Positions 34,557 to 63,338 of a stretch of 64,000 bases of DNA are shown one piece after another. Made by a program: the position numbers and the translations under genes. Location of the stretch: IMG/VR virus record IMGVR_UViG_3300032331_003609, positions 124,001 through 188,000 of that record; one strand, 5' to 3'. The notes beneath the pieces were generated by a model. That model was not told where the DNA came from. It worked only from the letters and a program-made list of their open reading frames with translations, and made no database searches. How positions within the stretch are numbered: position 1 is the stretch's first letter; every line of letters begins with the position of its first letter.

Positions 34557-35303
34557 GTGGTCAATCGTATTAAAAATTTTAAACAGTGGATTTTAAATGA
34601 GGGTGAATTCTATCAGAATGAGCTTAATACCCTTTTTTGGACCAATTCTCAGTTTGATCCCTCTATAAGAGAAAAGCTACTTCAGATCGCTAATGAATTT
34701 TATCAAACGTTCAAATTAGAAATCCCAATCTCCGATATTCAATTAACTGGATCTTTAGCTAACTATAACTGGACACCTAAGTCAGATCTTGACGTTCACG
34801 TCCTAATAGATTTTTCTAAACTTAATCCAGATATTGCTTTAGTTAAAAAGGGAATAGACGGACAAAGATTTATCTGGAACTTAAGACATAATATAGTTAT
34901 GAGAGGACATGATGTTGAATTATATCTTCAAGACGTAAACGAGCCTCACATAGCTTCTGGTCTATTTTCTCTTTTAAATAACGAATGGATAAGAATCCCT
35001 AAGTATAATCCGCCCCAAATAGATGAAATGGATGTGCAAAAGAAGTTTGAGGGAATAGTAAATGATATAGATCAATTAAATGCTAATCTTGAAAGCGGAA
35101 GTTCAGCTATATCTCCGAGGGAGCTTTATGACCATTCAGAAAAGGTTAAATCTAGAATCATGAAAATGAGAAAAGAGGGTCTTGCAGAGAGGGGGGAATT
35201 CTCTGTAGAAAATTTAGTGTTTAAAAAGCTCAGAAACGAAGGATATATACAGAATCTTATCGACCTAATATCCAGGTCATACGAGAAAATTTATAACGAA
35301 TAA
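34557..35303 (+). CDS. Pol-beta superfamily nucleotidyltransferase with capsid-targeting-like N-terminus
   Basis: LTGSLANYNW...SDLDVH (GS..DxD) and DVELY; N-terminus IKNFKQWILNE. Confidence 0.8.
   Translation: MVNRIKNFKQWILNEGEFYQNELNTLFWTNSQFDPSIREKLLQIANEFYQTFKLEIPISDIQLTGSLANYNWTPKSDLDVHVLIDFSKLNPDIALVKKGIDGQRFIWNLRHNIVMRGHDVELYLQDVNEPHIASGLFSLLNNEWIRIPKYNPPQIDEMDVQKKFEGIVNDIDQLNANLESGSSAISPRELYDHSEKVKSRIMKMRKEGLAERGEFSVENLVFKKLRNEGYIQNLIDLISRSYEKIYNE
35242..35249 (+). promoter_or_regulatory. GATATATA inside the NTase 3' end, possible promoter of 35315..37840
   Basis: Exact motif 65 nt upstream of the next start. Confidence 0.4.
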
Positions 35304-35314
35304 AAACCAAAAAG

Positions 35315-37840
35315 ATGTCAGGAATTTACAAAGGATACAATCCTATTTTCGAATCAATGAAGCAAGAGCTTTTTGAGGAGGAAACTAAAATAGACGTAGA
35401 TGCACTTATTAGAGCTATCTACGACACTTTTGTTAACCTAATAGTTAATGGAACAGACGAGGCAGTTAAAACTCCTGATGGATTTAAAGCATACATGGAA
35501 AAGGCTTTACAAGCCAGCTCTTTAAATGGTATTCAGGCTGAATTTGAAAAAAGAATAGATTTAATGGCTGCTACTGATAAAAGTCAAGCAGAAGCATTAA
35601 ACCAATCTAGATCCTATATTGGACAATTATTCTCATCATTAAAATCTGCAGTAGGTGAAGATTCCAAAGGTCTACAAAAAGCTATAGATAAAATGACATC
35701 TTTAATGGGATCTACAATAACTAGTTTTCAATCAGTTCAGGTTGAACTTCAAAAGAACGAAAGCTTAGTTAGCAGATACTTAATGGAAGATAATGAGCAA
35801 TTAACAGGAGAGGAAGCAGATTCTGAAGATGGATTAGCAGATAAATGGTATACCCAATTATCTAAAAATCTTTTAGACAGCGCAACGTCTTTTAAAGGAG
35901 AAACAGCATCTGCCATGGCTAGCAAAAATTTAGCTGGCAATTCCGAGGTTCAGAATTTTTCTCAATCTTCTCAGCAATATCTGGAGCAAGCAAAGCAATT
36001 AGCAATATCAGGGGGTAGGAGAGGATTATTTCAAACAGGAAAACTCCAAACAGCTTCAGGTCCTATGAAAGCTAAAGATTATAGAGTAAAGGCTCAAAAT
36101 CTTGTCAATGAGATAATCAGACAAAGAGAAGAATTTAGAAAATTAAATTACAAACTATCTAATATTCCTGCACCAACAAATCCAATCGTGGTTTGCCCAA
36201 CAGGTATGGCGTTTGATGTAGCAAAAAATGCTTGCGTATTTGTTACCGTTCCTGTAGTTAATACAGGAGGAGGAGGCGGGGACACTAAACCACCAAGGCC
36301 AAAGCCAACACCAGTTACAACTGGATGTACTTTTCCAGTTGCTATAGGAGCATCTAAATGCTCGGAGGTAGCAGCACTTCAAGGTAAATTGATTAGTATG
36401 GGATCTTGTATGGCTGATATCTTAAATGCAGCAGGGGGAGCAGATGGAAGATATGGTAAAGTAACAGCTAAGTTAGCAAACATCACTTATGCTTATATGA
36501 TGAAGTCAAATTCATTTAATGCAGCAGGAGAATTAACCCAAGAAATGTATAATGCTATAATGGCAGGAGGCCAGGTAATATACCAACAGCCACCAACAGC
36601 AGTGAAAGATTCATTAGACGTTTCTAAAGTTTTAGAAAACAAAACATTTGAAAAAGAACATCAAACAGGGACACCAGTTTTATCATTTGGTGATTTCTCT
36701 AAGATCCTAACAGAAGCTGTCTATTTAACTGAAGATGCAGGTATTCCTAATACATCAAGAAGCATAGCATCTTGTATATGTTCAACATATCAATCTGGAA
36801 ATATAGATCCAAATTGCTTCTCAATTGTCCCAGTACCAGTTCCAAACCCTACAGGAGGAACAGGAGCAACAGGAGGAACAGAGCCAATACCGGGTCAAGC
36901 AGATTGGAAAGGACTTAAATATGTTAATAGTGGATCTTATCCGGTTTCATTCGACGAAAGTCTTTTAAGTTTCTGGACCAAAGAAATAATAATTGATGCT
37001 TTAACATTCTGGGCACCAGGAGGAACATACGCTCTAAAAGCAGGAGCAACGGGTCTTAAATCATTAGGTATCAAGGGAGCCTCTAAAGCTGGAATGACAA
37101 AATTAGCTACTAAATTGGCAGCTAGCGCATCAACTAAAGCAGCTACACTAGGAACTGAAAAAGTAGCTTCTAAATTAGCTAACGTTTCTGCAGGATATTT
37201 TGCTAAATATGGTAGAATTCCTATCGCAAAGAGAACAGCAGCTGGACTTCTTGGAGGAACGGTTGGTGGTGCATTCTTTGACTTCATAGCGGGAAGAGAC
37301 ACTTTTGTTATCACATCAGTAGAAGGATTTGTAGAAAGAAACATGATAATGGGAATAGCTAAGGGTCTGACAAATACACTTGATGGATACTGCAGTGATG
37401 ACGATTGGGCATGCATAACACAGGTTTTAGCTATTACTAAAGGCGGTTGGACAGTGGACGAGGATGATAAAGCAGTATCAATTTGGTCACAGCTTAAGAA
37501 ATTCTACATGGAATCAGAAGGCGAGGAATTAATAGACGATATAAAGAGTGTTAAAGCTAAATTTGGAGATGTTGAAGGATATCCTAATGTTAAATCACTT
37601 TCTCCGCTTGCAAGTGTATCTGATCTTGATTGGGATTTAGCAAAAGCTGAGACTAATAGATTTGTTGATGCTCTTGAAAGAAACGAATCTAAGCTAGCGG
37701 AAAACCTTGCTAAACTTCCTGAAAAGTACGTTCAAGCATTCGTAGAGGGTGCTTATGATGAGATTGATGAAGAAGGAGAAGCAACTTCTGCTGACGGAAA
37801 AGAAGCTCCGGAGGAAAAAGCAATAAACAAACCTCAATAA
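35315..37840 (+). CDS. 841-aa putative internal/ejection protein with peptidoglycan-binding-like motif and hydrophobic Gly/Ala segment
   Basis: YNPIFES N-terminus; EVAALQ.KL...GADG.YG..T motif; AAGLLGGTVGGAFF segment. Confidence 0.7.
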   Translation: MSGIYKGYNPIFESMKQELFEEETKIDVDALIRAIYDTFVNLIVNGTDEAVKTPDGFKAYMEKALQASSLNGIQAEFEKRIDLMAATDKSQAEALNQSRSYIGQLFSSLKSAVGEDSKGLQKAIDKMTSLMGSTITSFQSVQVELQKNESLVSRYLMEDNEQLTGEEADSEDGLADKWYTQLSKNLLDSATSFKGETASAMASKNLAGNSEVQNFSQSSQQYLEQAKQLAISGGRRGLFQTGKLQTASGPMKAKDYRVKAQNLVNEIIRQREEFRKLNYKLSNIPAPTNPIVVCPTGMAFDVAKNACVFVTVPVVNTGGGGGDTKPPRPKPTPVTTGCTFPVAIGASKCSEVAALQGKLISMGSCMADILNAAGGADGRYGKVTAKLANITYAYMMKSNSFNAAGELTQEMYNAIMAGGQVIYQQPPTAVKDSLDVSKVLENKTFEKEHQTGTPVLSFGDFSKILTEAVYLTEDAGIPNTSRSIASCICSTYQSGNIDPNCFSIVPVPVPNPTGGTGATGGTEPIPGQADWKGLKYVNSGSYPVSFDESLLSFWTKEIIIDALTFWAPGGTYALKAGATGLKSLGIKGASKAGMTKLATKLAASASTKAATLGTEKVASKLANVSAGYFAKYGRIPIAKRTAAGLLGGTVGGAFFDFIAGRDTFVITSVEGFVERNMIMGIAKGLTNTLDGYCSDDDWACITQVLAITKGGWTVDEDDKAVSIWSQLKKFYMESEGEELIDDIKSVKAKFGDVEGYPNVKSLSPLASVSDLDWDLAKAETNRFVDALERNESKLAENLAKLPEKYVQAFVEGAYDEIDEEGEATSADGKEAPEEKAINKPQ

Positions 37841-37844
37841 TAGA

Positions 37845-37871: not shown

Positions 37872-39953
37872 ATGAGTCTTAACCCTGAATTCGTTTTGGT
37901 CTTGGAAAAATCTTCACATAACCTGAAGTCCGAGAAGAATGGTAACGAATATTATCTTGAAGGTATAGCAGCAGTGTTTGGTAAAGAGAATTCAAACCAA
38001 AGAATCTACGAGGAAAGAGAATATCTTCCCCATTTGCAATATTTAAAAGAAAAGATAGAACAAAAAAGATTAGTAGGTGAATTAGATCACCCTAAGGAAT
38101 TTGATGTGTCTTTAAAGAATATTTCACACCTAGTTGAAGAGCTTGCTTATGATCAAGAGAATAGAACTTTAAGAATTAAAGTTAGACTTTTAGATACACC
38201 AGCAGGTAAAATAGCTAAATCTTTAGTTGATGCTGGTATTCCAGTTTCTATCTCATCAAGAGCAGCAGGCAACGTGATGGAAAACAAAAAAGTACAAATT
38301 AAGAAGATTTTTACCTATGATCTAGTTGCTGATCCTGGATTTGAGAATGCTCAATTAGAAAGAGTTTACGAAAGCTATGGATACAATCTTAACGAAAAGT
38401 CAAAAAATGAATCCATTTTAAATGGTCTTCCTTTGATGAACGAAAGCTTAGGATTAGAAAATGATTCAAATTTTAAGATATATAGAATCAAAGATCAAGA
38501 TAAGATACAAAAGCTTCTAGATAAGGAGCCAAATAAGAGTTTAATCATGGAAAATAATTTCGTTACAGCGGAAGAAATGAATGGATATTCTAAACTAATC
38601 AAAAAAGAAATGGACACTATTAAAGGGTCTATTGAATCATTGAAAGGGATTAAAGAATCTTCCAAAATAACAGAATCATCTTCTCTTGAGGAAAGAGTTG
38701 GTAAGTTAGAAAAGTATGCTGATTATTTAGCAGAAAACCTAGAGGCATCTATTAAGTATGGTGAATACCTAGCTGAAAATTTAGAAGATTCAGTTTCTTA
38801 TTCTAAGTATCTTGCAGAGAACCTAGACAAATCTATTTCTTATGCAAAATATCTTGCTGAGCATTTAGATCACAATATCTCTTATTCTGAGTACATTGCA
38901 GAGAACGTTGACAACAACGTAACAGCAGTTAAAGGTCTAACAGAGAAAGTTGATCAATCTATTGCTTATGCAGAATATGTAGCAGAGAACGTAGACAAGA
39001 ACATTAAGTATAGCGAATACCTTGCTGAAAACTTAGATAAGAACATCTCTTATTCTGAGTATCTTGCTGAGAACGTAGATAAGAACATTTCTTATTCTGA
39101 GTACTTAGCAGAAAACCTAGATAAAGGTTTAGCTTATAGCGAATACTTAGCTGAGAAATTAGATAAGAACATTTCTTATTCTGAGTACTTAGCAGAAAAC
39201 CTAGATAAAGGTTTAGCTTATTCTGATTATCTTGGTGAGAACCTAGATAAGACAGTTCATTACAGTGAGTATATCGCTGAAAAATTAGCTAACAACATCA
39301 GCTATGCAGAATACATCGCTGAGTCTGTAAATGCAGCTTCAGGAACCGCAGAGGTAAAAGAAGCAGTAACAAAAGCAATTTCTGAAAACACAAGAACTTC
39401 AGGATATGCAGGAGATTACACAGAGATCTCTTCTAAAATTGACAATTTATTGAACACTGTCGGTAAACAAAAGACAGAAGAAATAGCAGAAAATAAGAAC
39501 TATCCTTTCTTAAAGCTTATGGGCGAACAAGGACAAAGAGAATTTTTATCACTGCACGAAGGCCAAAAACAAAAGGTCGCCAAATCCTTAAACGAAAACA
39601 ATTACTCATCCGAAAAAGAGGTAGTTGAAATTATGGGTAAAACTCTGAATGAGCAAAATCAATCCGGAGAAAAATTCCTAGATTTAATGCCAGAAAAATA
39701 CAAAACTACATGGGAGAATATGAATGAGTCTCAAAAGGCCTCTATATTAGCTCAAAGTAAGTTTCATAAATTGGATACTCCTTACCAAATCCAGAATTTC
39801 TGGGCTACAAGAGGTATTGCAGTTACCAAGGCAAATATCGAAAGAATAGACGAATCCCAAGAACAAATAACCGCAGCTCCTCAGCCAAAGGGAATATCTA
39901 GAGAATATTTAGATAATCTTTCTGAAGCTTTAGCTGTTAGGTTTAAAAAATAA
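37872..39953 (+). CDS. gp21: Prohead protease (gp21, U9 family) fused to gp22-like scaffold
   Basis: LEGIA...N.N.RIY, GELDHP, NISH, LDTPAGKIAK.L, ISSRA.G, TYDLVADPGF; then about 500 aa helical scaffold directly before gp23. Confidence 0.93.
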   Translation: MSLNPEFVLVLEKSSHNLKSEKNGNEYYLEGIAAVFGKENSNQRIYEEREYLPHLQYLKEKIEQKRLVGELDHPKEFDVSLKNISHLVEELAYDQENRTLRIKVRLLDTPAGKIAKSLVDAGIPVSISSRAAGNVMENKKVQIKKIFTYDLVADPGFENAQLERVYESYGYNLNEKSKNESILNGLPLMNESLGLENDSNFKIYRIKDQDKIQKLLDKEPNKSLIMENNFVTAEEMNGYSKLIKKEMDTIKGSIESLKGIKESSKITESSSLEERVGKLEKYADYLAENLEASIKYGEYLAENLEDSVSYSKYLAENLDKSISYAKYLAEHLDHNISYSEYIAENVDNNVTAVKGLTEKVDQSIAYAEYVAENVDKNIKYSEYLAENLDKNISYSEYLAENVDKNISYSEYLAENLDKGLAYSEYLAEKLDKNISYSEYLAENLDKGLAYSDYLGENLDKTVHYSEYIAEKLANNISYAEYIAESVNAASGTAEVKEAVTKAISENTRTSGYAGDYTEISSKIDNLLNTVGKQKTEEIAENKNYPFLKLMGEQGQREFLSLHEGQKQKVAKSLNENNYSSEKEVVEIMGKTLNEQNQSGEKFLDLMPEKYKTTWENMNESQKASILAQSKFHKLDTPYQIQNFWATRGIAVTKANIERIDESQEQITAAPQPKGISREYLDNLSEALAVRFKK
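38712..39341 (+). repeat. 15 tandem 42-bp (14-aa) repeats, consensus SYSEYLAENLDKNI
   Basis: Counted in translation from KYADYLAENLEASI to SYAEYIAESVNAAS; unit 6 is degenerate. Confidence 0.92.
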
Positions 39954-39968: not shown

Positions 39969-41726
39969 ATGCAACTTATCAATCAACATGAAATCTATGA
40001 AACCTGGGCACCAATATTGGAAAGCAAAACAGGTATTCAAGAGAGAGGTAAATTAGACTGGTTAACTAAATACTGTCATTACCACTCATTAAACGAATCT
40101 GCCGGAGCGTATAACTCTTTAGGCGTATTAAACGGTATGGGCCAAGTATCTCCTGCTTCTAACGTAGGTTTATCTGGCGGTCCTGCTGGCTTTTATGCAG
40201 GCGGATCTTATTCTGGAACTGGTCTTGGTTCTGGCGATAAATTCCCTTCTCTTTTACCTTTAGCTATTCAAGTAGCTGCTAAAACAGTAGGTTTTGATAT
40301 CGTTCCAGTTATCCCAATGAGCGGTCCTACAGGCGTATTATCATACTTAGACTATGTTTACGCAGGTGGTAAATTATCTGGTACTGACTCTGTATCTCCA
40401 TACACAGCAAACACTCCAGATTTAATTAAAGTTCCAACAACAACAGCTTCTCCAGTTACTGGTTTAGCAGTAGGAACCACTTACCTTTTAGGTGCTTCTG
40501 GTCTTTCTTCAACAAAAGACTTAGACTCTGCAGGTGTAGGTGCTTTAGTAGCTGGTAAATTCGTCGGTAGTTCAAGAATCGATGGTTTCCCAATTTTCCA
40601 AGTGGTAGCATTAACTGTAGGTTTCTCTATTGCTGACGCAATCGGGGCAGACGCAGTTATTTACTCTGGTTCATATAATACAGGTACAAAGGTTTATACA
40701 ATCTCTGCAACAGTAGGATATGCAAACGGTGCTGCTCAATTAGTTAAAACTTTAGAAGATCACGTACAAGGATTTACTGGTTCTGGCGTTGCTAACGACG
40801 GTACATGGTCTGGTCCTTATGTAGACGGTACTAAAGCTTACGATCCAATGTCAAGAGGAACTGCAGAAGGCACTTACTTCAAGTCATTAGGTCTTTCTAC
40901 ATTCACTAAGTTTGTAGAGGCTGGTACATTCCAAGTTGCTGCTTCTGTTACAACTGAGCAAATCCAAGATTTGAACAAGCAATTCGGTATCGACGTAGTT
41001 TCTATGATCGAGAACGCACTTGTTAACGAGGTTTCTCAAGCGATCAACAAGCACATCTTATCTAGAGCATTTGCTTTAGGTTGGTCTAACCACTATGAAT
41101 TTGCAAACACCGAATTAGGTGGAGCATCTTCTGCTTCTCTAAACATCAATTTAAATATTGGTTCTGGTGGAGCTTCAACCGCATCTTTCATCGGTAAGGA
41201 CAATGGATCTTTAACAATCTATACTCCTGGCGATATTGCTACAGGCGGATACGAGAACCAATCAACTGTACAAAGAAGATTATTCTCAAGAATCTTGGCT
41301 GCTGCTAACGTAGTAGCAAACAGAGGAAGAAGAGGACCTGCTAACTTTATTGTTACTAACGCTCAGGTAGCTTCTGCTTTACAAGATATTTCACAATTCA
41401 CATTTGCTCCTTTTACAAACACGTTAACTCAAAATAACGGTACTTTATATCCAGTTGGTTCAATCGCTGGTATGACCGTTTATGTTGATCAAAACATGTC
41501 TTTTGGCGATACGAGAGTATTAGTTGGAAGAAAAGGTGCTGATGACGAACCAGGTATGAAATTTATGCCTTACATGATGGCTGAGTCAATTCAGACTATC
41601 TCTGAAGGTACAATGTCACCTAAAATTGCAGTTAAGTCTAGATACTCTTTAGTAGAGGCTGGACATCATCCTCAAACAATGTACTTATGCTTCAAAGCTA
41701 TAGTACCTGCAACTGGTATCGCTTAG
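39969..41726 (+). CDS. gp23: Major capsid protein, T4 gp23-like
   Basis: W.PIL, VGFDIVPV.PMSGPTG, Q.AA..T.EQIQDL...GID...., NF.V...VAS.L, G...G..VYVD, G.KF.PY, SRY.L; strong codon bias. Confidence 0.96.
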   Translation: MQLINQHEIYETWAPILESKTGIQERGKLDWLTKYCHYHSLNESAGAYNSLGVLNGMGQVSPASNVGLSGGPAGFYAGGSYSGTGLGSGDKFPSLLPLAIQVAAKTVGFDIVPVIPMSGPTGVLSYLDYVYAGGKLSGTDSVSPYTANTPDLIKVPTTTASPVTGLAVGTTYLLGASGLSSTKDLDSAGVGALVAGKFVGSSRIDGFPIFQVVALTVGFSIADAIGADAVIYSGSYNTGTKVYTISATVGYANGAAQLVKTLEDHVQGFTGSGVANDGTWSGPYVDGTKAYDPMSRGTAEGTYFKSLGLSTFTKFVEAGTFQVAASVTTEQIQDLNKQFGIDVVSMIENALVNEVSQAINKHILSRAFALGWSNHYEFANTELGGASSASLNINLNIGSGGASTASFIGKDNGSLTIYTPGDIATGGYENQSTVQRRLFSRILAAANVVANRGRRGPANFIVTNAQVASALQDISQFTFAPFTNTLTQNNGTLYPVGSIAGMTVYVDQNMSFGDTRVLVGRKGADDEPGMKFMPYMMAESIQTISEGTMSPKIAVKSRYSLVEAGHHPQTMYLCFKAIVPATGIA

Positions 41727-41828: not shown

Positions 41829-42941
41829 ATGAAGCTTATTGAAAATTTTAAATCATATAGTGATTGCAAAGAAGCATTAATAGAATCGTATGGTGATATT
41901 GATATTGCAAAAACCAAATTAATTAAAAAGGGATATTCATCGGATGATTTAGACGAAAGTTTAAATGCAATCAAAGAATCATTAGGCGATAAGATTATTA
42001 ACTTTTTTTCTAAAAATCTAGGGGGTGGTATTTCTAAAATAGACAGAATACTAAGAGATATAAAAGAAGAAGAAATTAGATTTATCAGGGACGAGCATGA
42101 AGCAGAATCTAAATTCTATAAATTAAGCACAGCACTAGGACAATTAAAAAGGGATAAAGCAGACAAGTCGGAAATGGATCAATATGTTATTAAATTGAAT
42201 AAGATTCAAAAATTAATAAGAGATTTAGTTTCTTCACACAGCTCTATTATGGATAGCCTAGAAAAACAAATAGATGTTCTAACTAATAAGAAGAATAGAA
42301 GAAGCGAGTACTATAACTTAAAAAGAGCAGAGGATGCTGTAGAGACTAAAAAACTAAGAGCAGAATTTAAAAAGAAGCTTATTAGTCAAGAAGATGATTC
42401 TGAGTACTTAAAAGATATTCAAAAGATTCTTGGAAATCCCAAAGATGCAGAGAAAGATTTAGAAAAAGCTAAGGAGAACCTAGCTAAAGAAAAAGGTGAA
42501 ATAGGAGCAAGCGACGAGGTTTCTAGAATGTCACCAGATAAGATAGAAAATATCTTGAGTGAATATCATAAAGAAATTATGGCTTCGCTCAAAGACGTTA
42601 AAGACTATACAGAAAAATCATTAGACAGGATTCAAGAGCTTTCTGATAATAAGAAAATGAATCAAGGAGCTTATAACAGTATGAAAAATACATTTGAATC
42701 TAAGATAAGTAAGATTTCTAAGTATGTTGAAGAAGCTAAGAGTAAAATATCACAAATAGGAACTTCCGATGAAGAGATAGGAGAAGATTCAAATAAAGCA
42801 ATAACTTATCTTTTGAACCTGGAAAAAGCAGTTACCAATATAAAGTATTATACTTGGCCAGCTGATGATCTTTCTAAAGAGAAAAAAGAGATTCAATCTG
42901 CTTTAGAAGTAGTAGAAGACGAAATACAAAAAGCAGCTTAA
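41829..42941 (+). CDS. Charged coiled-coil putative internal head protein
   Basis: MKLIENFKSY N-terminus; K/E-rich helical composition. Confidence 0.75.
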   Translation: MKLIENFKSYSDCKEALIESYGDIDIAKTKLIKKGYSSDDLDESLNAIKESLGDKIINFFSKNLGGGISKIDRILRDIKEEEIRFIRDEHEAESKFYKLSTALGQLKRDKADKSEMDQYVIKLNKIQKLIRDLVSSHSSIMDSLEKQIDVLTNKKNRRSEYYNLKRAEDAVETKKLRAEFKKKLISQEDDSEYLKDIQKILGNPKDAEKDLEKAKENLAKEKGEIGASDEVSRMSPDKIENILSEYHKEIMASLKDVKDYTEKSLDRIQELSDNKKMNQGAYNSMKNTFESKISKISKYVEEAKSKISQIGTSDEEIGEDSNKAITYLLNLEKAVTNIKYYTWPADDLSKEKKEIQSALEVVEDEIQKAA

Positions 42942-43768
42942 TGAAGAAGTACTCAGACTTCATATTGGACGATTCCCTTAATGAAGGTTTTCTAAAGAAC
43001 CTCTTTGGAAAAATAGGATCTTTCCTCAAGGGCAGTAAAAGATCTATTTTAGATAAGATTTCTAAAATGAAAGATGCCGAAAAGGAATTCATCAATAAAT
43101 CTGATGAATTAAATTATGATATCTTTTCTTCAGAACTAGGAAGAAACCAAGATCCAAATTCAAGACAAAGAGCATTGATGAGCAAAAGAGCACTTGAAGC
43201 TATAAGGCTTGCAAAAAATGGTGAAATAAATTTCATAGTAAAGGAAGTGAAAGAAATATGCGGTTCTGATCCTTCCCTTGCAAATTTTTACAATCAACAA
43301 AAAATGCTAGCAGACACAGAGCTTGCACAATATGCCTATGAGAAAGCCAAAAAATTTAAAGATAATGATTATGAGAGGGATTTTTATAATCAATGGAAAA
43401 CTTTAGACTCCGAGGTTCAAAAGGTTAAATTTGACAGTTTTGAAGATGAAGAAGACACTGTTGCTAATTTAGGAATGTTTGATCTTCCGTTAAAAGAATT
43501 TGTTAGTCAAATACAAGGATTACCTAAATCTGACATAGCTCAATTATTAAGCGATGCAAATGATTTAAAATGGAAAATTGCTGACGATTATAGAAAAAAA
43601 TCAATGAGCATTCGCGAATTAAAAAATAGATCATATAGATCCGGCGATATATCCTCTTTTAATTTTTCAAGAGAGAAGTTTGAAGAAATGAAAAATATAT
43701 ACAGAAAGGCTAATGTCTCTATAGACAATAAAATATCAATGCTAAAAAACAGATTAAAGAATATATAA
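42941..43768 (+). CDS. Charged coiled-coil putative internal head protein, related to 41829..42941
   Basis: MKKYSDFILDDSLNE|G; a FF/FL-...-I..I...E.EFI pattern is shared with the preceding gene. Confidence 0.75.
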   Translation: MKKYSDFILDDSLNEGFLKNLFGKIGSFLKGSKRSILDKISKMKDAEKEFINKSDELNYDIFSSELGRNQDPNSRQRALMSKRALEAIRLAKNGEINFIVKEVKEICGSDPSLANFYNQQKMLADTELAQYAYEKAKKFKDNDYERDFYNQWKTLDSEVQKVKFDSFEDEEDTVANLGMFDLPLKEFVSQIQGLPKSDIAQLLSDANDLKWKIADDYRKKSMSIRELKNRSYRSGDISSFNFSREKFEEMKNIYRKANVSIDNKISMLKNRLKNI

Positions 43769-43779: not shown

Positions 43780-46143
43780 ATGAAAAATAACATCTATAAC
43801 CCACTTTTTGAAAGCTTGCTTAAAAAAGTAAACGATTACGAAAATCCACAAGGCATCTCAGAACAAGATGGTGCGGTGAAAGGAACTATTTTTAGCGACT
43901 ATATGAAAGCTATGTCTCAATTAGGTTCTAAATTGGTTGCACAATATGCCAATGCTATTCAGACCTATCCTAAGACTGCTGTTAAGACTGAATACATGAA
44001 AACCTTTACTGATAAATTAAAGGCCATTGAAAGCTCTATAGATATTACAAAAACACCATCTATCCAATTGGATGCTTTATTTAACAATGTTAAAACTGAG
44101 GCAACAGCATTTTTTGGATTGGGTGCTAAAGAAGATAAAAATCTTGTTAAATACCTAGAGCCATGGAGAGATGCATTTAGAACAGGATTTCAACTTTATA
44201 CCCAAGCATTTAAAAGCTTAATGGAATATGTTAAAAAACAAGAAGAGAGTGGCCAAGCTAAAATTAGCGAAACTGAAAAGGGTATGATGAAAGCAGGTGT
44301 TAGTAAATTTATTGCATCACTTACTGCATCTTTTGAAAAAAACAAGACAATCACAGATACTAAATGGGGAGAACCCGTTGTTGGTGAGTCTTTAGTTAGA
44401 GATAACTCAGTTATAGAAAAACTAATTCAAAACAAAATATGCGTTGATTTTAACACCTTTAATACAGTAGTTAATGAAGCTAAAGAGGATAGAATTGCAA
44501 GAAGAGCAGCAAAATCAGCAAGGGTTAATATAGAAGTATTACAGGCAAACATTTCAAATGTTCTAAACCAAATAGGAGGGAGACTTGGAGATCCGGCTAA
44601 AGCTAATTTTAAATCTCTAGCAATGGCTCCTGAATTTAACAAGATTGCAAACACTCTAGTTTCTATCCAAGACGAATTGTCAATTGATAGGTCAGAATTA
44701 AAGAATGTTCAATTTGATGATTTAGATAAACAAATTGCCAATCTAACGGATCTATTCAAGACTAAAAAAGATTCTTATGATAAGACATATTCTGAAGAAG
44801 AAAAAACACTAAGAAGTTCTAAAACATTAGAAATTGCAACACCAGAGGTTGCCAAGTTTATTGCAGACGGAGATGCTCAATTCGATGCATTATCAGATCT
44901 GGCTCAAAACGGAGCTAATCTTTTCTCTGCAGATATTGAAAAAGCAAAACAAGATAAATCACAAGCAGATAAAATAAAGGGAGAATCTCAACCAAAGAAT
45001 CCAGGCAAGAAAGACGGAGAGGTACAAAAAGGTCAAGACGGAGCAGATTGGAAATGGGACGCTAAAGCAAAGGTTTGGAATAAAGTAGAAGTTGCTGATC
45101 CTGTTTCTACCTCAAATATTAAAATTGCATCACCGATTAAAAAAGGTGCTAAAGGTGATCAGGTTAAAGCAGTTCAGCAATTGATCATGGATAAAATGGG
45201 TACAAAATTGAAAGATGTACCTCAGTATAAGAAATTTGCTAAATACGGAGCAGATGGTATATTCGGAGGATCCACAGCATCTTTAGTTCCTGCGATGAAA
45301 GGGGCGTTAGGGTTAAAAGACACTTCTTCTGATATTACACAGGAATTGGTTGATAAATTATCAGCAGTTATTAAAGAATCATTTGTTTTCGAACAAGATT
45401 TCGATATGGACGTTTTTAATAAAATCATAGGAAGCGGAGGGGGAGGAGACACCAAACCAGCAAAGGGAAGTTCGGGTGCAGGATCACCTATAAATTCTGC
45501 AGCTTTTAAATGTATTAAAGCTAAGGAAACTACAGAATTTGCAATGAAGGGAGGAAAAGCAGTGGTAACAAGGGCAACTACTGGAAATATTCACGAATTT
45601 AAAGCAGACGGAAGTTATAGAATTTACATAAAAAGTGAGGATAAATGGAAAAGGGGTGTTTGGAGTTGTGCGGGTAATTCTTATCAAGCAACAATAGAAG
45701 GAGGCGAAGTCTATCTTGGTGATTATCAGAATTTTAAAAGTGAAATTGATAAATCGCAAAAAGTAGCAGCAGAAGCAGCAGCTAAAAAAGCAGCAGAACA
45801 GATTGCTAGTGCTAGAGTAATTTGTCAGATTCTCCTTCAAGCAATGGCAGGTGCTAGTGAAGATGAGGGAACAGTTTATAAAACATTCCAGGATAAAATC
45901 ACAACCAAGGAGATGTTTAATACTGTTGAGGCCCAGTGGAATTCGCTTTGGCCAAGTAAAGCTGATATGAACGGCACGATGATATCAGCTAAATCAAAAA
46001 GTTGGGAAGAACTTAAGAAAGCGTGTGCATTTACTGGAACAAAGAATGGATTTAGCTTTAGAAACATATTTACACAGTTTTTTAGTTCTTCTGAAATAGC
46101 TAGATTGAATCAATATTTACCAGCAGGGGTTAAAGCAATTTAA
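43780..46143 (+). CDS. 787-aa putative internal/ejection protein with peptidoglycan-binding-like motif
   Basis: YNPLFES N-terminus; IKKGAKGDQVKAVQQ...YGADGIFG..T motif. Confidence 0.72.
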   Translation: MKNNIYNPLFESLLKKVNDYENPQGISEQDGAVKGTIFSDYMKAMSQLGSKLVAQYANAIQTYPKTAVKTEYMKTFTDKLKAIESSIDITKTPSIQLDALFNNVKTEATAFFGLGAKEDKNLVKYLEPWRDAFRTGFQLYTQAFKSLMEYVKKQEESGQAKISETEKGMMKAGVSKFIASLTASFEKNKTITDTKWGEPVVGESLVRDNSVIEKLIQNKICVDFNTFNTVVNEAKEDRIARRAAKSARVNIEVLQANISNVLNQIGGRLGDPAKANFKSLAMAPEFNKIANTLVSIQDELSIDRSELKNVQFDDLDKQIANLTDLFKTKKDSYDKTYSEEEKTLRSSKTLEIATPEVAKFIADGDAQFDALSDLAQNGANLFSADIEKAKQDKSQADKIKGESQPKNPGKKDGEVQKGQDGADWKWDAKAKVWNKVEVADPVSTSNIKIASPIKKGAKGDQVKAVQQLIMDKMGTKLKDVPQYKKFAKYGADGIFGGSTASLVPAMKGALGLKDTSSDITQELVDKLSAVIKESFVFEQDFDMDVFNKIIGSGGGGDTKPAKGSSGAGSPINSAAFKCIKAKETTEFAMKGGKAVVTRATTGNIHEFKADGSYRIYIKSEDKWKRGVWSCAGNSYQATIEGGEVYLGDYQNFKSEIDKSQKVAAEAAAKKAAEQIASARVICQILLQAMAGASEDEGTVYKTFQDKITTKEMFNTVEAQWNSLWPSKADMNGTMISAKSKSWEELKKACAFTGTKNGFSFRNIFTQFFSSSEIARLNQYLPAGVKAI

Positions 46144-49749: not shown

Positions 49750-50331
49750 TTAATTGAAAAATCTATTAAAAGCAGGGTTTAAAATTTCTTCAGATTCTTC
49801 TTCTTCATGATCCATTTCCTCGCCTTCTTCCATTTCTTCGTGGGTCATTTCTTCTCCTTCCTCCATTTCTTCATCTTCTTCCATTTCTTCCTCATTGACA
49901 TCCGCTTCATCTTCTAGTTCTTCCTCCTCATTATACTCATCTAGGTCAATTTCTTCCTCTTCACCATCCTCTTCATCCTCATCTTCTTCGTTCATATTTT
50001 CTTCCATATCTTCCTCTTCTTCCATACTTTCTTCTTCTTCCTCTTCTTCCATACTTTCTTCTTCTTCCTCTTCTTCTTCCTCGTTATCTGTCATATCATC
50101 AGAAGTGGTATCATCGTCCATATCAAATGAGGAATCTACTCCATCAGTTTCTTCATCTTCTTCTTCTGTTTCATCGTCAGTAGGAATTGAATCTGCACCA
50201 CCATCGGTTTCAGTTTCTTCTTGATCTGCTGTATCTGCAGTGTCCATATCCATTTCTGTATTGTCTTGACCAAGTGTTCCTTCAGTGTATTGTTTAGAAA
50301 ACTCCTCAAAACTTAATATCTTTTTTTCCAT
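49750..50331 (-). CDS. Extremely acidic poly-Glu/Asp protein, putative internal head or core protein
   Basis: 193 aa with runs such as EEEEEEEESMEEEEEEESMEEEE; MEKKILSFEEF N-terminus; GATATATA 18 nt upstream. Confidence 0.8.
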   Translation of the reverse strand: MEKKILSFEEFSKQYTEGTLGQDNTEMDMDTADTADQEETETDGGADSIPTDDETEEEDEETDGVDSSFDMDDDTTSDDMTDNEEEEEEEEESMEEEEEEESMEEEEDMEENMNEEDEDEEDGEEEEIDLDEYNEEEELEDEADVNEEEMEEDEEMEEGEEMTHEEMEEGEEMDHEEEESEEILNPAFNRFFN

Positions 50332-50376: not shown

Positions 50377-50610
50377 TTATTCTGCACCCCCTGATTCTAC
50401 TGCTCCGTTGCCTGGATAATCTATCTTAGATTGATTTTTAAAAATAGCGTCCCCATAACCAACATACTCGTAAGGTTTTTCTAATTTAATTTCATGAAAA
50501 GGGGATCTATCCTCTTTACTCATGTTCTTAGGATTCCATGGGTCTGCTATAACTTTTAAGAAGTCTTTAAACTCTAAGATCTCCCTCTTTTTTACGTTTT
50601 TCTGATGCAT
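50377..50610 (-). CDS. Small putative internal head protein
   Basis: 77 aa; ILEFKDFLK motif similar to neighbours. Confidence 0.6.
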   Translation of the reverse strand: MHQKNVKKREILEFKDFLKVIADPWNPKNMSKEDRSPFHEIKLEKPYEYVGYGDAIFKNQSKIDYPGNGAVESGGAE

Positions 50611-50624: not shown

Positions 50625-51323
50625 TTATCCTAGTCCTAAAAGACTTAATATTCCAGTATTAGTACTACCTGTTCCGTCGGTCGATTTGGCTGATGTTTTA
50701 GCTGCAGTAGCTAAATCTTTTTCTGAGAATTTTCCGCCTCCAAATATACTTTTGAATGATGTTCCTTCCCCACAAACTATTCCCTCTAATTTAGTTTCTA
50801 GCATAGTTGCAAAAGCGGTAGAGTTTATATAGGTAGTTAATGCCTCTCTTGTTGAAGCTACAAAAGTACCTCCTAAACCAGATTCAAAATTAATGTTTAT
50901 TCCTAATCCTCTAGAAAGTATAAGTGAGATAGCTTTTTCTTCTATTGTTTCTGTTAATCCTAATGTTATTGCTTTTGTCCAATATTTACAAGATCCTGCC
51001 CCGAAATAACTACCAATGTGCATAAATGAGATATTTTCCACTATATTCTTTGCAAATTCACTCATAAACCCACCGTCGTTTGGTAATCCGAATTTGTCCA
51101 AAAGCCATCCAGCAGCATAGTTTTTTAGTCTATCTTCAAATCCACCCATTAATTTACCGCCTAGACCGCTAATTAAATCCCAAAGGCCTTCATTTATTTG
51201 ATCTACTGATTCACCTTTGTGCAGCATATCATTATAATGAGCTTCTAAACCTTCCACTATTCTGAAATATTCTTCGTCTGTTACATTAACCTTTGTAAAT
51301 TCTGAATATTTGATGACTTTCAT
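50625..51323 (-). CDS. Putative internal head / membrane-active protein (true start MKVIKYSEF at 51323)
   Basis: GATATATA 17 nt upstream of this ATG; amphipathic Gly-rich helices (GLWDLISGLGGKLMGG; GILSLLGLG). Confidence 0.75.
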   Translation of the reverse strand: MKVIKYSEFTKVNVTDEEYFRIVEGLEAHYNDMLHKGESVDQINEGLWDLISGLGGKLMGGFEDRLKNYAAGWLLDKFGLPNDGGFMSEFAKNIVENISFMHIGSYFGAGSCKYWTKAITLGLTETIEEKAISLILSRGLGININFESGLGGTFVASTREALTTYINSTAFATMLETKLEGIVCGEGTSFKSIFGGGKFSEKDLATAAKTSAKSTDGTGSTNTGILSLLGLG

Positions 51324-51400: not shown

Positions 51401-51973
51401 TTGAAACACCTTCTAAGTTATAGAGATTTATTTGAAAGTACCTCTGCTGGATCCCAGGATAGGGGATCTTCAGATGTGCCTCCGTTCAAGTTTGCTATAA
51501 ACTTCGACCCTAGACTAGGATACACTAAAAACGATTTTGTGCAGGATTTGACTGAGATCTATTTGGGATATCCATTAAAGGACCGTAGAGATCTTATGGA
51601 TGCTGTTTTTAAAAGCGCTGGTGTTTTTAAAATATCAGACATTCAGGATCTTCCGCAGGACAGGGTAGATAAATTAATCAAAAGCGTAGAAGAGTATATG
51701 GAAAGTAAATCCGAGTATAAATTAGAAATACTTCCAGACGGGTTTATTCTTTGCTTTGAGGGGCTTAAACACCGAAAAAGAACTTGTGATGTTTATTACT
51801 CCCCGACGGAAAGAAAAGTAAAAATATCATATACCGACGCCTATCCAGAAAATGAAGAGATAATAATTGGGATAGATGGATTTTCTCCTATATCAGTAGG
51901 AGTTGATAATAACGATTTTATGGCGACGGTTGAAAAGTGCGATGATTATGCTAAAAAGTCTAATCCCTTATAG
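51401..51973 (+). CDS. Hypothetical protein with capsid-targeting-like N-terminus (TTG start)
   Basis: MKHLLSYRDLFE|S; late promoter 21 nt upstream. Confidence 0.7.
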   Translation: MKHLLSYRDLFESTSAGSQDRGSSDVPPFKFAINFDPRLGYTKNDFVQDLTEIYLGYPLKDRRDLMDAVFKSAGVFKISDIQDLPQDRVDKLIKSVEEYMESKSEYKLEILPDGFILCFEGLKHRKRTCDVYYSPTERKVKISYTDAYPENEEIIIGIDGFSPISVGVDNNDFMATVEKCDDYAKKSNPL

Positions 51974-59954: not shown

Positions 59955-60580
59955 TTAGTATAGTTTTTCCCCACGCTATGAACAAAGAGAATGATGCGGT
60001 TCTCCAATTGAAATTAAAAATGTTAGAAGAGAATTCCACTTACCCCTATGAGGTTATGGTTTTATCCAACACAGGAAGACCTGATTTAGTTTATGAATCA
60101 TGGGATTGGATGATGAGAAGAGCTAAATATGACCTGGTTCTATGGGATAATTCAGATATAACATATGCTCCAAAATTCATGGATAATATTATCAAACACA
60201 AAGATGATGCAGATTGGTTAGGACTCGAATTAATTGAATGTGGAGCCATAGGAGTGGCTGCAACCAACATCCATCAAGATTTTGGAAGAACAGCAAATTC
60301 TTTCAATAGATCAGAATTTGAAAAATGGGTGGAAGAATATTCTAAAGATCGCCCATCAATAAGAGAAGGATTTTGCTGGTACTCTCCTTCAGTTTGGAAG
60401 AAAGAATGGTACATTAAAATAGGTGGTTTTAACTTCTCAAAGCCATTTCCTCACCCGAATGATTCTGAGTTTAGAGAGAAGTGTATAGCAGCAGGATCAA
60501 CATTTGCTGTTGTTAATTCTTTTGCATATCATTTTCAAAGAGCAGGAGAAAATAGGGGAGAAAAACCAGAAAGAGAATAA
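59951..60580 (+). CDS. GT2-like glycosyltransferase
   Basis: ISIVFP, LWDNSD, GGF...P....DSEF, YHF. Confidence 0.65.
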   Translation: MISIVFPHAMNKENDAVLQLKLKMLEENSTYPYEVMVLSNTGRPDLVYESWDWMMRRAKYDLVLWDNSDITYAPKFMDNIIKHKDDADWLGLELIECGAIGVAATNIHQDFGRTANSFNRSEFEKWVEEYSKDRPSIREGFCWYSPSVWKKEWYIKIGGFNFSKPFPHPNDSEFREKCIAAGSTFAVVNSFAYHFQRAGENRGEKPERE

Positions 60581-60590
60581 TCAATGATAT

Positions 60591-62530: not shown

Positions 62531-62760
62531 TGATTAGTGTTTGATACGATTTCATTGGCTTTCAAAAGATCTTCTACTGTTTTAACTGTGTATATTGTTT
62601 GGCCAGGTACACCCCAGTCTTTTTGTTCACCCCAATTGATAAATCCTTGATGTGTGATATGGTTTCCTGAATTATAAGAAAAATCGTGATGTCCTTCTTT
62701 CGAAGACGCCTGTTCAAACTCATCCCTAGATGAAATATTTTTATATCCGTATTTTTCCAT
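62527..62760 (-). CDS. Small hypothetical protein
   Basis: 77-aa ORF; ATG overlaps the stop of the upstream minus-strand gene. Confidence 0.6.
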   Translation of the reverse strand: MEKYGYKNISSRDEFEQASSKEGHHDFSYNSGNHITHQGFINWGEQKDWGVPGQTIYTVKTVEDLLKANEIVSNTNH

Positions 62761-63338
62761 TATTTCTTTTTCTTTCTTAAGTTAGCTTTTGCCTGCTTGT
62801 AAAGTGCCTTATCTCCCATTTTAGATGTCTTACCCCCTGTAACAAACGAGTTAACCCTAGCCATTGCCCATTGTTGAGGATTAGTTCCTGGTATATGTCC
62901 TATTTTCCAAGCAGCATATCCTCTTTTCCACACTTTTTTTAAAATACCTAATGGGAATCTAGTTTTTTCGGATTTCTTTTTAAGTGCTTTATTTACTGGG
63001 CTAGAAACAGAATCTACACCCTCATTAAGATTGTCCAGGTTATGCTCCTCTTTTAGTTCATTAAAAACCTCCCAGGTTGCAATCTCTACTGCTTCATTGA
63101 ATCCTTCAAAACCTAATATTTTGCTGTTTTTATTTTCTCCAAACATTTTCTTGTATTTATTTGTGTATTGGCTAGTTTTTGTGCCAACTTTTTTACCTTT
63201 GCCTGCCTTTCCTGATTTATAATCTGCATCCCATTCAGTGTATGCTGAGGGATCATTATCAGCCTTATCCTTATTATCTTTAATCTCCCTTTTCATTATT
63301 CGGGGATTTTTGGTGAGATATTTCTTAGGTACTTTCAT
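62760..63338 (-). CDS. Basic virion-type protein with C-terminal domain resembling DUF5824-like proteins (true start MKVPKK at 63338)
   Basis: PLGILKKVWKRGYAAWKIGH.PG..PQQWAMARVNSF..GGKT; GATATATA 9 nt upstream. Confidence 0.7.
   Translation of the reverse strand: MKVPKKYLTKNPRIMKREIKDNKDKADNDPSAYTEWDADYKSGKAGKGKKVGTKTSQYTNKYKKMFGENKNSKILGFEGFNEAVEIATWEVFNELKEEHNLDNLNEGVDSVSSPVNKALKKKSEKTRFPLGILKKVWKRGYAAWKIGHIPGTNPQQWAMARVNSFVTGGKTSKMGDKALYKQAKANLRKKKK

What the first reader, a model, noticed from the sequence alone, without database searches (positions are those of the whole stretch)
34557..63338. A family of capsid-targeting-like N-terminal peptides marks about ten probable packaged proteins
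Unrelated late genes share a K-x-(I/L)-x-x-(F/Y)-x-x-(F/W/Y) leader ending at a (L/I/F)-x-E site. Examples: IKNFKQWILNE (34557), MKLIENFKSY (41829), MKKYSDFILDDSLNE (42941), MEKKILSFEEF (50331), EILEFKDFLK (50610), MKVIKYSEF (51323), MKHLLSYRDLFE (51401), and internal KILGFEGFNE (63338 gene). A second class YNP(I/L)FES occurs at 35315 and 43780. These resemble the T4 capsid targeting sequence MKTYQEFIAE, removed by gp21 after Glu. Most have GATATATA promoters. This predicts a large injected proteome.
Basis: partly seen in the sequence, partly recalled or inferred. Interest (0 to 1): 0.7.

Follow-up and report, generated by a model that had tools for sequence, protein, structure and literature searches.

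The report
Capsid-targeting-like leader peptides in jumbo phage
Roughly one protein in ten of this uncultured freshwater jumbo phage begins with the same short peptide, which resembles the tag phage T4 uses to load proteins into its head and then cuts off. If it works the same way, the sequence alone may show which proteins the virus carries into its host.

Summary
The window lies in a 245-kb IMG/VR phage record with a T4-type head module: an S77/gp21-like protease and a gp23-like capsid protein. About 25 of its 282 ORFs start with M-K-x-[LI]-x-x-[FY]-x-x-[FYWL]. The strict pattern occurs 22 times against 2.3-2.9 expected. A PSSM trained on two relatives finds 18 N-termini at 8 bits or more against about 0.1 expected.

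The carriers are unrelated beyond residue 25. The signal is at amino-acid level. Two near-complete relatives show the same excess (23 vs 3.2; 36 vs 4.7).

Orthologues at 15-30% identity keep the leader. In one family the only invariant residue is the Glu of the following [LIV]-N-E site. The same kind of site is conserved in the capsid-protein propeptide (homologous to T4 gp23's) and just after the protease domain.

Best reading: a T4-like capsid-targeting propeptide removed by the prohead protease. Packaging and cleavage remain untested. Likeness to the T4 tag is at pattern level only. Two of the listed examples are internal, not N-terminal.

I rate this a new variant of a known kind, of moderate to high interest.

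The parts
30536..31459 (+). 307-aa protein with a short form of the leader (LNE8|Q).
   Evidence: In the family of 53 members, 30 of 36 distinct N-termini read M-K-[YH]-I-K-x-[IL]-[ND]-E. No Pfam or PHROG family.
34557..35303 (+). 248-aa nucleotidyltransferase-fold protein. Leader at residues 1-15 (window 34557-34601), ending LNE15|G.
   Evidence: weak NTP_transf_2/MTPAP-like match, phrog_36119 at 1e-36; 36 of 43 distinct orthologue N-termini keep the leader, and the conserved domain begins after it. GATATATA lies at 34534-34541.
35315..37840 (+). 841-aa head-module protein of unknown family with the class-2 motif Y-N-P-I-F-E13|S.
   Evidence: orthologues at 26-30% identity keep [IL]-Y-x-G-x-N-[PFL]-[IV]-[FY]-E-[SQ]. 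No Pfam or PHROG hit. Atlas search gave nothing usable.
37872..39953 (+). Prohead protease (gp21/S77-like, residues about 17-165) fused to a long C-terminal extension. Candidate self-cleavage sites at RVYE167|S and MNE191|S.
   Evidence: PF03420 at 7.6e-9, phrog_207 at 1.9e-35; aligns to the T4 gp21 structure 5jbl. (alignment A1): H86, S128, S129, E167-S168 and N190 are invariant in 32 sequences; E191 and S192 are at least 90% conserved. Many relatives also have [LI]-N-E near the N-terminus.
39969..41726 (+). Major capsid protein (gp23-like). Propeptide region holds conserved sites PILE18|S and SLNE43|S.
   Evidence: PF07068 at 7e-39; residues 6-60 align with the T4 gp23 propeptide (T4 W-K-P-L-L-E-G against W-A-P-I-L-E-S). 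H-S-L-N-E-S-A is identical in all 39 distinct relatives.
41829..42941 (+). 370-aa protein immediately after the capsid gene. Canonical leader, then ALIE19|S.
   Evidence: syntenic in every relative, and the leader is kept while the rest falls to about 30% identity. PSSM score 11.4 bits. GATATATA at 41805-41812.
42941..43768 (+). 275-aa all-helical protein. Its leader M-K-K-Y-S-D-F-I-L-D is closest to the T4 IPIII tag, followed by SLNE15|G.
   Evidence: (alignment A2, 30 sequences at 14-58% identity): E15 is the only invariant column. AF2 mean pLDDT 84, long helices, residues 1-28 below 50. T4 tags read from the T4 genome.
43780..46143 (+). 787-aa head-module protein with the class-2 motif Y-N-P-L-F-E11|S.
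   Evidence: close relatives keep N-P-L-F-E-S-L. More distant ones have F-x-x-L-M-E-[SD]. No family hit.
49750..50331 (-). 193-aa hyper-acidic protein with the leader shifted by one residue (M-E-K-K-I-L-S-F-E-E-F).
   Evidence: GATATATA at 50350-50357. The acidic tail is reminiscent of the T4 core protein gp67.
50377..50610 (-). 77-aa protein with a leader-like motif at residues 10-19. Doubtful member.
   Evidence: the motif and its 9-residue N-terminal extension are conserved in 30 distinct orthologues. No Glu site follows. No promoter motif.
50625..51323 (-). 232-aa protein. Leader, then IVE24|G and INE45|G, then a Gly-rich amphipathic segment.
   Evidence: start chosen 17 nt after GATATATA (51341-51348). 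21 of 37 distinct orthologue N-termini match the leader regex, and most are followed by [VLI]-N-E.
51401..51973 (+). 190-aa protein with TTG start. Canonical leader ending LFE12|S.
   Evidence: PSSM score 15.2 bits. GATATATA at 51372-51379, divergent from the promoter of the neighbouring gene.
62760..63338 (-). DUF5824 protein with an internal leader-like stretch (window 63093-63122), followed by FNE, FNE and LNE sites. Doubtful member.
   Evidence: PF19141 at 2e-13. for the motif. GATATATA at 63348-63355.
34534..34541 (+). Example of the GATATATA promoter-like element. Others lie at 37845, 41805, 51372 and 53464 (+) and at 49679, 50350, 51341 and 63348 (-).
   Evidence: 18 matches against 5.4 expected; 38 of 46 genome-wide copies have an ORF start within 60 nt downstream; leader genes carry it more often than other genes, odds ratio 3.7, p = 5e-4.

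Best explanation
The leader is a T4-type capsid-targeting propeptide. It is a short N-terminal peptide in fixed register from Met1 (K2, L/I at 4, F/Y at 7, aromatic or Leu at 10).

Proposed mechanism, all inferred: the leader docks its carrier onto the assembling prohead core. The gp21-like prohead protease then removes it by cutting after a Glu in a hydrophobic-x-Glu site, most often [LIV]-N-E followed by G, S or A. The mature proteins stay in the head or, for scaffold-like members, are degraded. Those that stay would enter the host with the DNA.

Shown here: the motif, its excess over chance, its conservation, its link to late-type promoters, the conserved Glu sites, and the T4-type head module.

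Inferred only: binding to the core, cleavage, packaging and injection.

The class-2 motif N-P-[IL]-[FY]-E-S on the two large head-module proteins resembles the capsid protein's own propeptide site. It may use the same protease, and possibly the same docking surface.
For: 1. Excess over chance in fixed register.
- 22 observed against 2.3-2.9 expected.
- Aromatic enrichment only at positions 7 and 10 in three genomes.
- A PSSM trained on relatives G002 and G004 finds 18 G000 N-termini at 8 bits or more, against 0-0.1 expected.

2. The carriers are unrelated. Only one pair of 27 gives a BLASTP hit beyond residue 25.

3. The selection is on amino acids. Codons at the conserved positions follow genome-wide synonymous usage.

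4. The feature is clade-wide. G002 has 23 against 3.2 expected and G004 has 36 against 4.7. Orthologues at 15-30% identity keep the leader. The MoxR-like AAA+ orthologue in G001 keeps it at 33% identity.

5. The leader is coupled to Glu sites.
- [LIVF]NE lies in residues 6-26 of 8 of 35 leader proteins against 4 of 247 others, p = 9e-6.
- P2 is Asn in 34% of leader sites against 9% elsewhere.
- E15 is the only invariant column in alignment A2.

6. The same site types are conserved where T4 is cut.
- The capsid propeptide is homologous to T4 gp23's, and SLNE43|S is invariant.
- RVYE167|S and NE191|S follow the protease domain.
- T4 gp22, gp67, gp24 and gp21 show L/I-x-E near their N-termini.

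7. In the T4 CTS, residues 4 and 7 carry targeting and residues 8 and 10 carry processing (PMC9026906). That register is the same as here. The T4 IP tags were read from the genome.

8. Leader genes are enriched for the promoter motif that also precedes the portal and protease genes, among others.

9. Residues 1-28 of the 275-aa protein are modelled as disordered ahead of a confident helical body.
Against: - There is no proteomic or biochemical evidence. These phages are uncultured.
- The PSSM scores T4 IPI, IPII and IPIII at -4 to -11 bits, no better than the top 3-14% of random windows. Homology with the T4 tag is therefore not shown.
- [LIV]NE is not enriched genome-wide: 0.92 per 1000 aa against 0.87 expected.
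- 43% of non-leader proteins also have some [LIVMF]xE within residues 7-30. The cleavage-site argument therefore rests on position, P2 preference and conservation.
- Some carriers would be unusual capsid cargo: a MoxR-like AAA+ ATPase, a VWA/metallopeptidase-like protein and a thioredoxin. The thioredoxin's leader is absent from relatives.
- The more distant relatives examined (PTm1, LR756500) show few leaders near their capsid genes.
Confidence: 0.6

Rival explanations
1. The leader is a prohead core or scaffold assembly motif only. Its carriers co-assemble inside the prohead, and are then cleaved, degraded and expelled. There would then be little or no injected proteome.
For: - The best-conserved carriers lie directly after the capsid gene in every relative.
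- The 275-aa one is an all-helical protein.
- One carrier is hyper-acidic, like the T4 core protein gp67.
- In T4, gp22, gp67 and gp68 are cut to pieces by gp21 (PMC5694885).
Against: - Many carriers lie far from the head module and have enzyme folds: a nucleotidyltransferase, a lysozyme-like protein, an AAA+ ATPase, and a VWA/metallopeptidase-like protein.
- No internal clusters of Glu sites were found in them.
- hhalign found no relation between the 275-aa family and T4 gp22.
Confidence: 0.17
2. The leader is an amphipathic N-terminal docking helix for something other than the capsid, such as the membrane, a chaperone or ATPase, or another phage assembly. Its likeness to the T4 tag would be convergent.
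For: - The K/R plus aromatic pattern at i, i+3 and i+6 is typical of amphipathic helices.
- Carriers include an AAA+/VWA pair and many small proteins in regions without structural genes.
- The T4 tags do not score with the PSSM.
Against: - This does not explain the conserved Glu directly after the leader, which is the only invariant column in A2.
- It does not explain the sharing of [LIV]NE and [IV][FY]E sites with the capsid propeptide and the protease.
- It does not explain the concentration of carriers around the head genes.
Confidence: 0.15
3. The signal acts on the mRNA or on translation initiation. Examples would be an AT-rich start region, or a link with the phage's bS21 gene or with leaderless late transcripts. 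It would not act on the protein.
For: - Codons 2-13 of leader genes are slightly more AT-rich (GC 0.273 against 0.319). Lys and Leu codons lean mildly towards A/T.
- The promoter motif often ends only 4-6 nt before the ATG.
- The genome encodes bS21.
Against: - Phe, Tyr and Ile codons at the conserved positions follow background synonymous usage (p = 0.16-0.7).
- The conserved classes are amino-acid classes: F/Y/W at positions 7 and 10, L/I/V at position 4.
- The register is kept across orthologues whose DNA has diverged.
Confidence: 0.04
4. The pattern is chance, hidden paralogy, or wrong start codons.
For:
- Several starts (GTG, TTG, an internal ATG) had to be chosen.
- A relaxed regex also picks up signal peptides and other false positives.
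Against: - The excess is about tenfold over three kinds of control, in three genomes.
- BLASTP finds no paralogy beyond residue 25 except in one pair.
- The chosen starts sit behind the promoter motif and, at 34557 and 51323, match the N-termini of orthologues.
Confidence: 0.02

Closest known systems
T4 capsid targeting sequence (CTS) of internal proteins IPI, IPII and IPIII (Mullaney and Black 1996, as reviewed in PMC9026906)
   Same: - A 10-19-residue N-terminal tag starting M-K, with the key hydrophobic or aromatic residues at positions 4 and 7.
- Shared by otherwise unrelated proteins.
- Ends at an L/I-x-E site for the gp21 protease.
- The genome has homologous gp21- and gp23-type genes.
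- One leader here (window 42941) matches the IPIII tag at M1, K2, Y4, F7 and I8.
   Different: - The consensus differs: L/I rather than Y/F at position 4, a third aromatic at position 10, and a preferred [LIV]-N-E site 3-9 residues further on.
- T4 tags do not score with the leader PSSM.
- There are about 25-36 carriers per genome, against a handful in T4.
- The carriers include enzyme-like proteins.
- Function is untested here.
Long propeptides of head and ejection proteins in phiKZ-like giant phages (SPN3US, phiKZ, 201phi2-1; PMC5694885, PMC7411985)
   Same: - Jumbo phages with a gp21-related prohead protease that trims many internal head proteins after Glu.
- The propeptides are thought to target proteins into the prohead.
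- The set of packaged proteins is large.
   Different: - Those propeptides are mostly over 100 residues long, with no short leader shared across them.
- The one SPN3US cleavage site seen in the passages read is ALE-111. The motif itself is not stated there.
- The capsid genes of that lineage are not the closest relatives found here. Those are Lak-type and Tenacibaculum-type phages.
gp21 cleavage sites in T4 structural proteins (gp23, gp24, gp22, gp67, gp68, gp21)
   Same: - The capsid propeptide here aligns with that of T4 gp23, including the P-[IL]-[IL]-E-[GS] site.
- The class-2 motif N-P-[IL]-F-E-S resembles S-I-F-E-S in T4 gp22.
- Sites lie at the protease's own termini, as proposed for gp21.
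   Different: - The likely maturation site of the capsid protein (SLNE43|S) lies about 20 residues upstream of the position equivalent to T4 E65|A66.
- Asn at P2 is a preference not evident in the T4 sites read here.

Membership tests
T4-type capsid targeting sequence | Short tag at the extreme N-terminus, in fixed register from Met1 | tested here: met
   Position-specific enrichment only at residues 4, 7 and 10 in three genomes. The anchored pattern is in about tenfold excess.
T4-type capsid targeting sequence | Carried by otherwise unrelated proteins | tested here: met
   All-against-all BLASTP without the first 25 residues finds one related pair among 27. The carriers have diverse domains or none.
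T4-type capsid targeting sequence | Ends at a prohead-protease site (hydrophobic-x-Glu) | tested here: inconclusive
   A site is present in 62 of 81 leaders against 43% of other proteins. P2 Asn is enriched and E15 is the only invariant column in A2. Cleavage itself has not been observed.
T4-type capsid targeting sequence | Genome encodes a gp21-family protease and a gp23-family capsid protein with a cleavable propeptide | tested here: met
   PF03420 and phrog_207, PF07068, alignments to 5jbl and to full-length T4 gp23, and conserved catalytic His and Ser.
T4-type capsid targeting sequence | Sequence similarity to the T4 IP tags | tested here: not met
   The leader PSSM scores T4 IPI at -4.2, IPIII at -5.2 and IPII at -11.0 bits. 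Only the pattern M-K-x-hydrophobic-x-x-aromatic is shared.
T4-type capsid targeting sequence | The tag is sufficient for incorporation into proheads and is removed during maturation | not testable with these tools
   This needs virion N-terminomics or reporter fusions. The one structure-prediction attempt (protease domain plus leader) gave no verdict.
phiKZ-type giant-phage propeptides | Long propeptides (about 100 residues or more) on internal head proteins | tested here: not met
   Candidate Glu sites lie at residues 8-45, and the conserved domains start right after them.
Secretion or lipoprotein signal peptides | Uncharged hydrophobic core of 10 or more residues after a basic N-terminus | tested here: not met
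   The leaders are charged and amphipathic. True signal and lipoprotein peptides exist in the genome and were filtered out separately.

The most novel reading that the evidence does not exclude
A whole clade of uncultured freshwater jumbo phages, probably infecting Bacteroidota, marks 7-10% of its proteome with a fixed-register capsid-targeting propeptide. That is 20-36 proteins per genome, including a nucleotidyltransferase, a lysozyme-like protein and an AAA+/VWA pair. If so, the packaged and injected proteome could be read directly from sequence. A second signal class on two very large head proteins would imitate the capsid protein's own propeptide.
Probability: 0.45. Interest if true: 0.75.

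Novelty: new variant of a known kind. Interest (0 to 1): 0.62.

Why it matters
- Packaged, ejected proteins are a phage's first weapons inside the cell. In T4 they include an anti-restriction protein and an ADP-ribosyltransferase. For uncultured jumbo phages there is at present no way to tell which genes encode such proteins.
- A sequence-readable loading tag would give a candidate list for a whole clade: about 80 proteins in three genomes here.
- It would point to fast-evolving host-takeover factors. Between genomes whose capsid proteins are 95% identical, carriers are 52-81% identical.
- It would extend the T4 CTS principle, which is already used for protein delivery, to a distant lineage with a different consensus.

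Tried and rejected
- **Protease-leader complex.** I folded the protease domain (A1, residues 1-163) with a 26-residue leader. The result was no verdict, score 0.00. It counts neither for nor against binding.
- **Relation to the T4 scaffold.** A profile comparison of the 275-aa family with T4 gp22 gave probability 0.4%. A Pfam scan of all 30 family members gave only scattered weak hits.
- **Fold searches.** I searched the 275-aa model against viral and PDB libraries. Only generic helical-repeat matches came back, none at E of 0.001 or better.
- **ESM Atlas.** Searches for the 841-aa and 275-aa proteins scored below 0.9 and were uninformative.
- **More distant relatives.** I scanned 25-42 kb around the capsid genes of Tenacibaculum phage PTm1, LR756500 and Lak-A2. 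There were at most one or two leader-like N-termini. Lak is poorly called under code 11. How far beyond this clade the system reaches is therefore open.
- **Lake metatranscriptomes.** Contigs of four runs laid on 37800-43800 cover the protease and capsid genes, and next to nothing of the leader genes downstream. Contigs show presence, not absence, and those genes diverge fast, so no conclusion follows.
- **Genome-wide site enrichment.** I considered [LIV]NE enrichment as evidence for cleavage. It is not enriched genome-wide.
- **Thioredoxin as cargo.** I downgraded it, because orthologues lack the extension.
- **Literature.** No paper in the library links capsid targeting with metagenomic huge or jumbo phages. 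The 'moraphage' and bS21-phage papers do not mention such leaders.

Full report
**Context**

The window is bases 124001-188000 of a 244,850-bp IMG/VR virus record, estimated 86% complete. It uses the standard code: long ORFs cover 81% of the record and all three stop codons are used.

The flagged region holds a T4-type head module.
- 37872-39953 encodes a 693-aa protein. Its N-terminal part is a gp21/S77 prohead protease (PF03420 7.6e-9; phrog_207 1.9e-35). It aligns to the T4 gp21 structure 5jbl.
- 39969-41726 encodes a gp23-type major capsid protein (PF07068 7e-39).

The nearest named relatives of the capsid protein are an uncultured 462-kb phage (44% identity), the Lak megaphages (39%) and Tenacibaculum phage PTm1 (32%). 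IMG/VR holds at least 228 contigs of closer relatives, and 80 loci with capsid identity of 99-63% were fetched. Lake and freshwater metatranscriptomes contain the capsid and protease genes.

**The observation**

- Six are true N-termini. One uses GTG, one uses TTG, and one is an internal ATG that lies 17 nt behind a promoter-like motif.
- Two are internal: residues 10-19 of the 77-aa protein, and residues 73-82 of the DUF5824 protein.

A gene call over the whole record shows the motif is much more common than 'about ten'. About 25 of 282 ORFs begin with M-K-x-[LI]-x-x-[FY]-x-x-[FYWL] or a version shifted by one or two residues.

The strict anchored pattern is met by 22 called N-termini.
- The rate at internal positions predicts 2.3.
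- Shuffling residues 2-30 gives 2.9 +/- 1.7, maximum 9 of 1000.
- A few of the 22 are signal peptides.

A regex-free count gives the same picture. Among proteins without a hydrophobic N-terminus, aromatic residues are enriched only at positions 7 and 10, and L/I/V at position 4. All neighbouring positions sit at background. This holds in this genome and in two relatives fetched whole: G002 (250 kb) and G004 (373 kb, with terminal repeats).

Those relatives carry 23 and 36 strict leaders against 3.2 and 4.7 expected. A PSSM trained only on the relatives finds 18 N-termini in this genome at 8 bits or more, where internal windows predict 0-0.1. Two of the 18 are membrane-type false positives.

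**What kind of signal it is**

The carriers are not paralogues. Without their first 25 residues, only one pair of 27 gives a BLASTP hit.

The constraint is on amino acids. Phe, Tyr and Ile codons at the conserved positions follow genome-wide synonymous usage. Lys and Leu show only the mild A/T lean usual at 5' ends.

Positions the regex leaves free are also biased: K2 49%, H/N3 48%, K5 36%, E8 33%.

The leader is linked to a promoter-like element.
- GATATATA occurs 18 times in the window against 5.4 +/- 2.6 in shuffles.
- 38 of 46 genome-wide copies have an ORF start within 60 nt downstream.
- It precedes the first portal gene, the protease gene and several large ORFs whose function I did not determine.
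- Leader genes carry it or a one-base variant more often than other genes (19/35 against 60/247, p = 5e-4). Most of the rest sit second in an operon.

**Conservation**

In the 80 related loci, the two genes directly after the capsid gene are syntenic everywhere. Both always start with a leader, although the proteins fall to 15-30% identity.

In an alignment of 30 members of the 275-aa family, the only invariant column is E15, the Glu of the S-L-N-E|G site that ends the leader.

Other families behave the same way.
- The nucleotidyltransferase family keeps the leader in 36 of 43 distinct N-termini. Its conserved domain begins right after the leader.
- The 232-aa family (50625-51323) also keeps it.
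- Outside the head region, the MoxR-like AAA+ carrier has an orthologue in relative G001 at 33% identity that keeps leader, V-N-E|G site and promoter.
- The thioredoxin's N-terminal extension is absent from four relatives, so that member is doubtful.

**Link to the prohead protease**

Leaders are followed by hydrophobic-x-Glu sites more often than other N-termini (62/81 against 424/993). They show a marked preference for Asn at P2 (34% against 9%) and for Ser or Ala at P1'. [LIVF]NE lies in residues 6-26 of 8/35 leader proteins against 4/247 others (p = 9e-6).

The tripeptide itself is not enriched genome-wide. The signal is therefore positional.

The same two site types are conserved exactly where a T4-like protease is expected to cut.
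- The capsid protein's N-terminus aligns with the T4 gp23 propeptide, W-A-P-I-L-E-S against T4 W-K-P-L-L-E-G. H-S-L-N-E43|S-A is identical in all 39 distinct relatives.
- R-V-Y-E167|S is invariant directly after the protease domain, and in [LIVM]-N-E191|S the Asn is invariant and the Glu and Ser at least 90% conserved. Many relatives also have [LI]-N-E within the protease's first ten residues.
It resembles both the capsid site and S-I-F-E-S in T4 gp22.

**Comparison with T4**

Read from the T4 genome, IPII and IPIII begin M-K-T-Y-Q-E-F-I-A-E and IPI begins M-K-T-F-K-E-F. gp22, gp67, gp24 and gp21 have L/I-x-E near their N-termini.

Published mutagenesis places capsid targeting at residues 4 and 7 of the CTS, and processing at residues 8 and 10 (PMC9026906). 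That is the register found here. The leader at 42941 shares M1, K2, Y4, F7 and I8 with IPIII.

However, the PSSM of this clade's leaders does not recognise the T4 tags (-4 to -11 bits). I therefore claim 'works like' with moderate confidence, and do not claim sequence-level membership.

**Cargo**

Carriers with a recognisable fold are:
- the nucleotidyltransferase (34557);
- a lysozyme/endolysin-like protein;
- a Fib_succ_major-domain protein;
- a MoxR-like AAA+ ATPase next to a DUF2201 metallopeptidase/VWA protein;
- a second DUF2201 fragment at the contig end;
- the doubtful thioredoxin.

The rest have no family. Other points bear on what the carriers are.
- The 275-aa protein is modelled as long helices, with residues 1-28 at low confidence.
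- The 193-aa protein is hyper-acidic, like the tail of T4 gp67.
- Carriers evolve fast. Where the capsid protein is 95% identical, they are 52-81% identical.

Some carriers are therefore probably core or scaffold components rather than injected effectors. The evidence does not separate the two fates.

**Verdict**

The motif family is real, statistically secure and clade-wide.

The best explanation is a T4-like capsid-targeting propeptide removed by the gp21-like protease (confidence about 0.6). The main rivals are a core-assembly motif without an injected proteome, and an unrelated docking helix.

No paper in the searchable library describes such leaders in metagenomic jumbo phages. I rate it a new variant of a known kind.

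Noticed in passing
window 21351-22943 and 22947-24680 (+): Two tandem paralogous portal-protein genes (phrog_213, 6e-65 and 5e-59) with similar N-termini. Only the first is preceded by GATATATA.
   Followed up: partly
G000:C1:18947-19141 (outside the window; locus L082): The phage encodes a ribosomal protein bS21 (PF01165, 3e-13). Unlike in the published bS21 phage clades, it does not lie beside the head genes.
   Followed up: partly
genome-wide; in the window e.g. 17401-17408, 41805-41812, 63348-63355: The promoter-like GATATATA ends either 4-6 nt or about 14-23 nt before the start codon. The short class would give leaderless or nearly leaderless late mRNAs. No Shine-Dalgarno sequences are evident upstream of the genes.
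   Followed up: no
window 46744-48177 (+) and 48174-49661 (-): An asparagine-synthase-like gene and a RimK-type ATP-grasp gene flank the head module. The ATP-grasp protein has a weak Zn-protease-like C-terminus. The ATP-grasp gene carries the late-type promoter motif. Possible peptide-ligase chemistry on virion or ribosomal proteins.
   Followed up: no
window 49750-50331 (-): A 193-aa protein whose residues from about 40 to 185 are almost entirely Asp, Glu, Met and Thr, behind a leader. It is reminiscent of the acidic tail of T4 core protein gp67, or of DNA-mimic proteins.
   Followed up: partly
window 41829-43768 and 50625-51323; loci L002-L081: Right after the putative cut site, three carrier families share a Gly-rich amphipathic segment (N-F-G-G, G-K-I-G-S-F or L-G-G-x-F types). 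This hints at a second conserved element, or at distant common ancestry.
   Followed up: no
window 53490-62530 (+): A run of about ten co-oriented genes follows the head region. The two I inspected by eye have N-termini that look like Rossmann-fold (NAD-dependent sugar epimerase/dehydratase-type) proteins (58920-59954, 61523-62530). The run starts with a GATATATA-preceded gene. No family search was run, so a sugar-modification role is only a guess.
   Followed up: no
window 32986-34517 (+): An Fpg/Nei-type DNA glycosylase (PF01149) and a PolB-like 3'-5' exonuclease (PF10108) sit immediately upstream of the head module.
   Followed up: no
window 37800-41726: Contigs from lake and freshwater metatranscriptomes (2017-2025 runs) match the protease and capsid genes at 95-100% identity. 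Close relatives of this phage are therefore widespread, and apparently transcribed, in lakes.
   Followed up: partly
window 51341-51379: Two GATATATA motifs lie back to back on opposite strands, 24 nt apart. They drive divergent leader-bearing genes, one of which has a TTG start.
   Followed up: no
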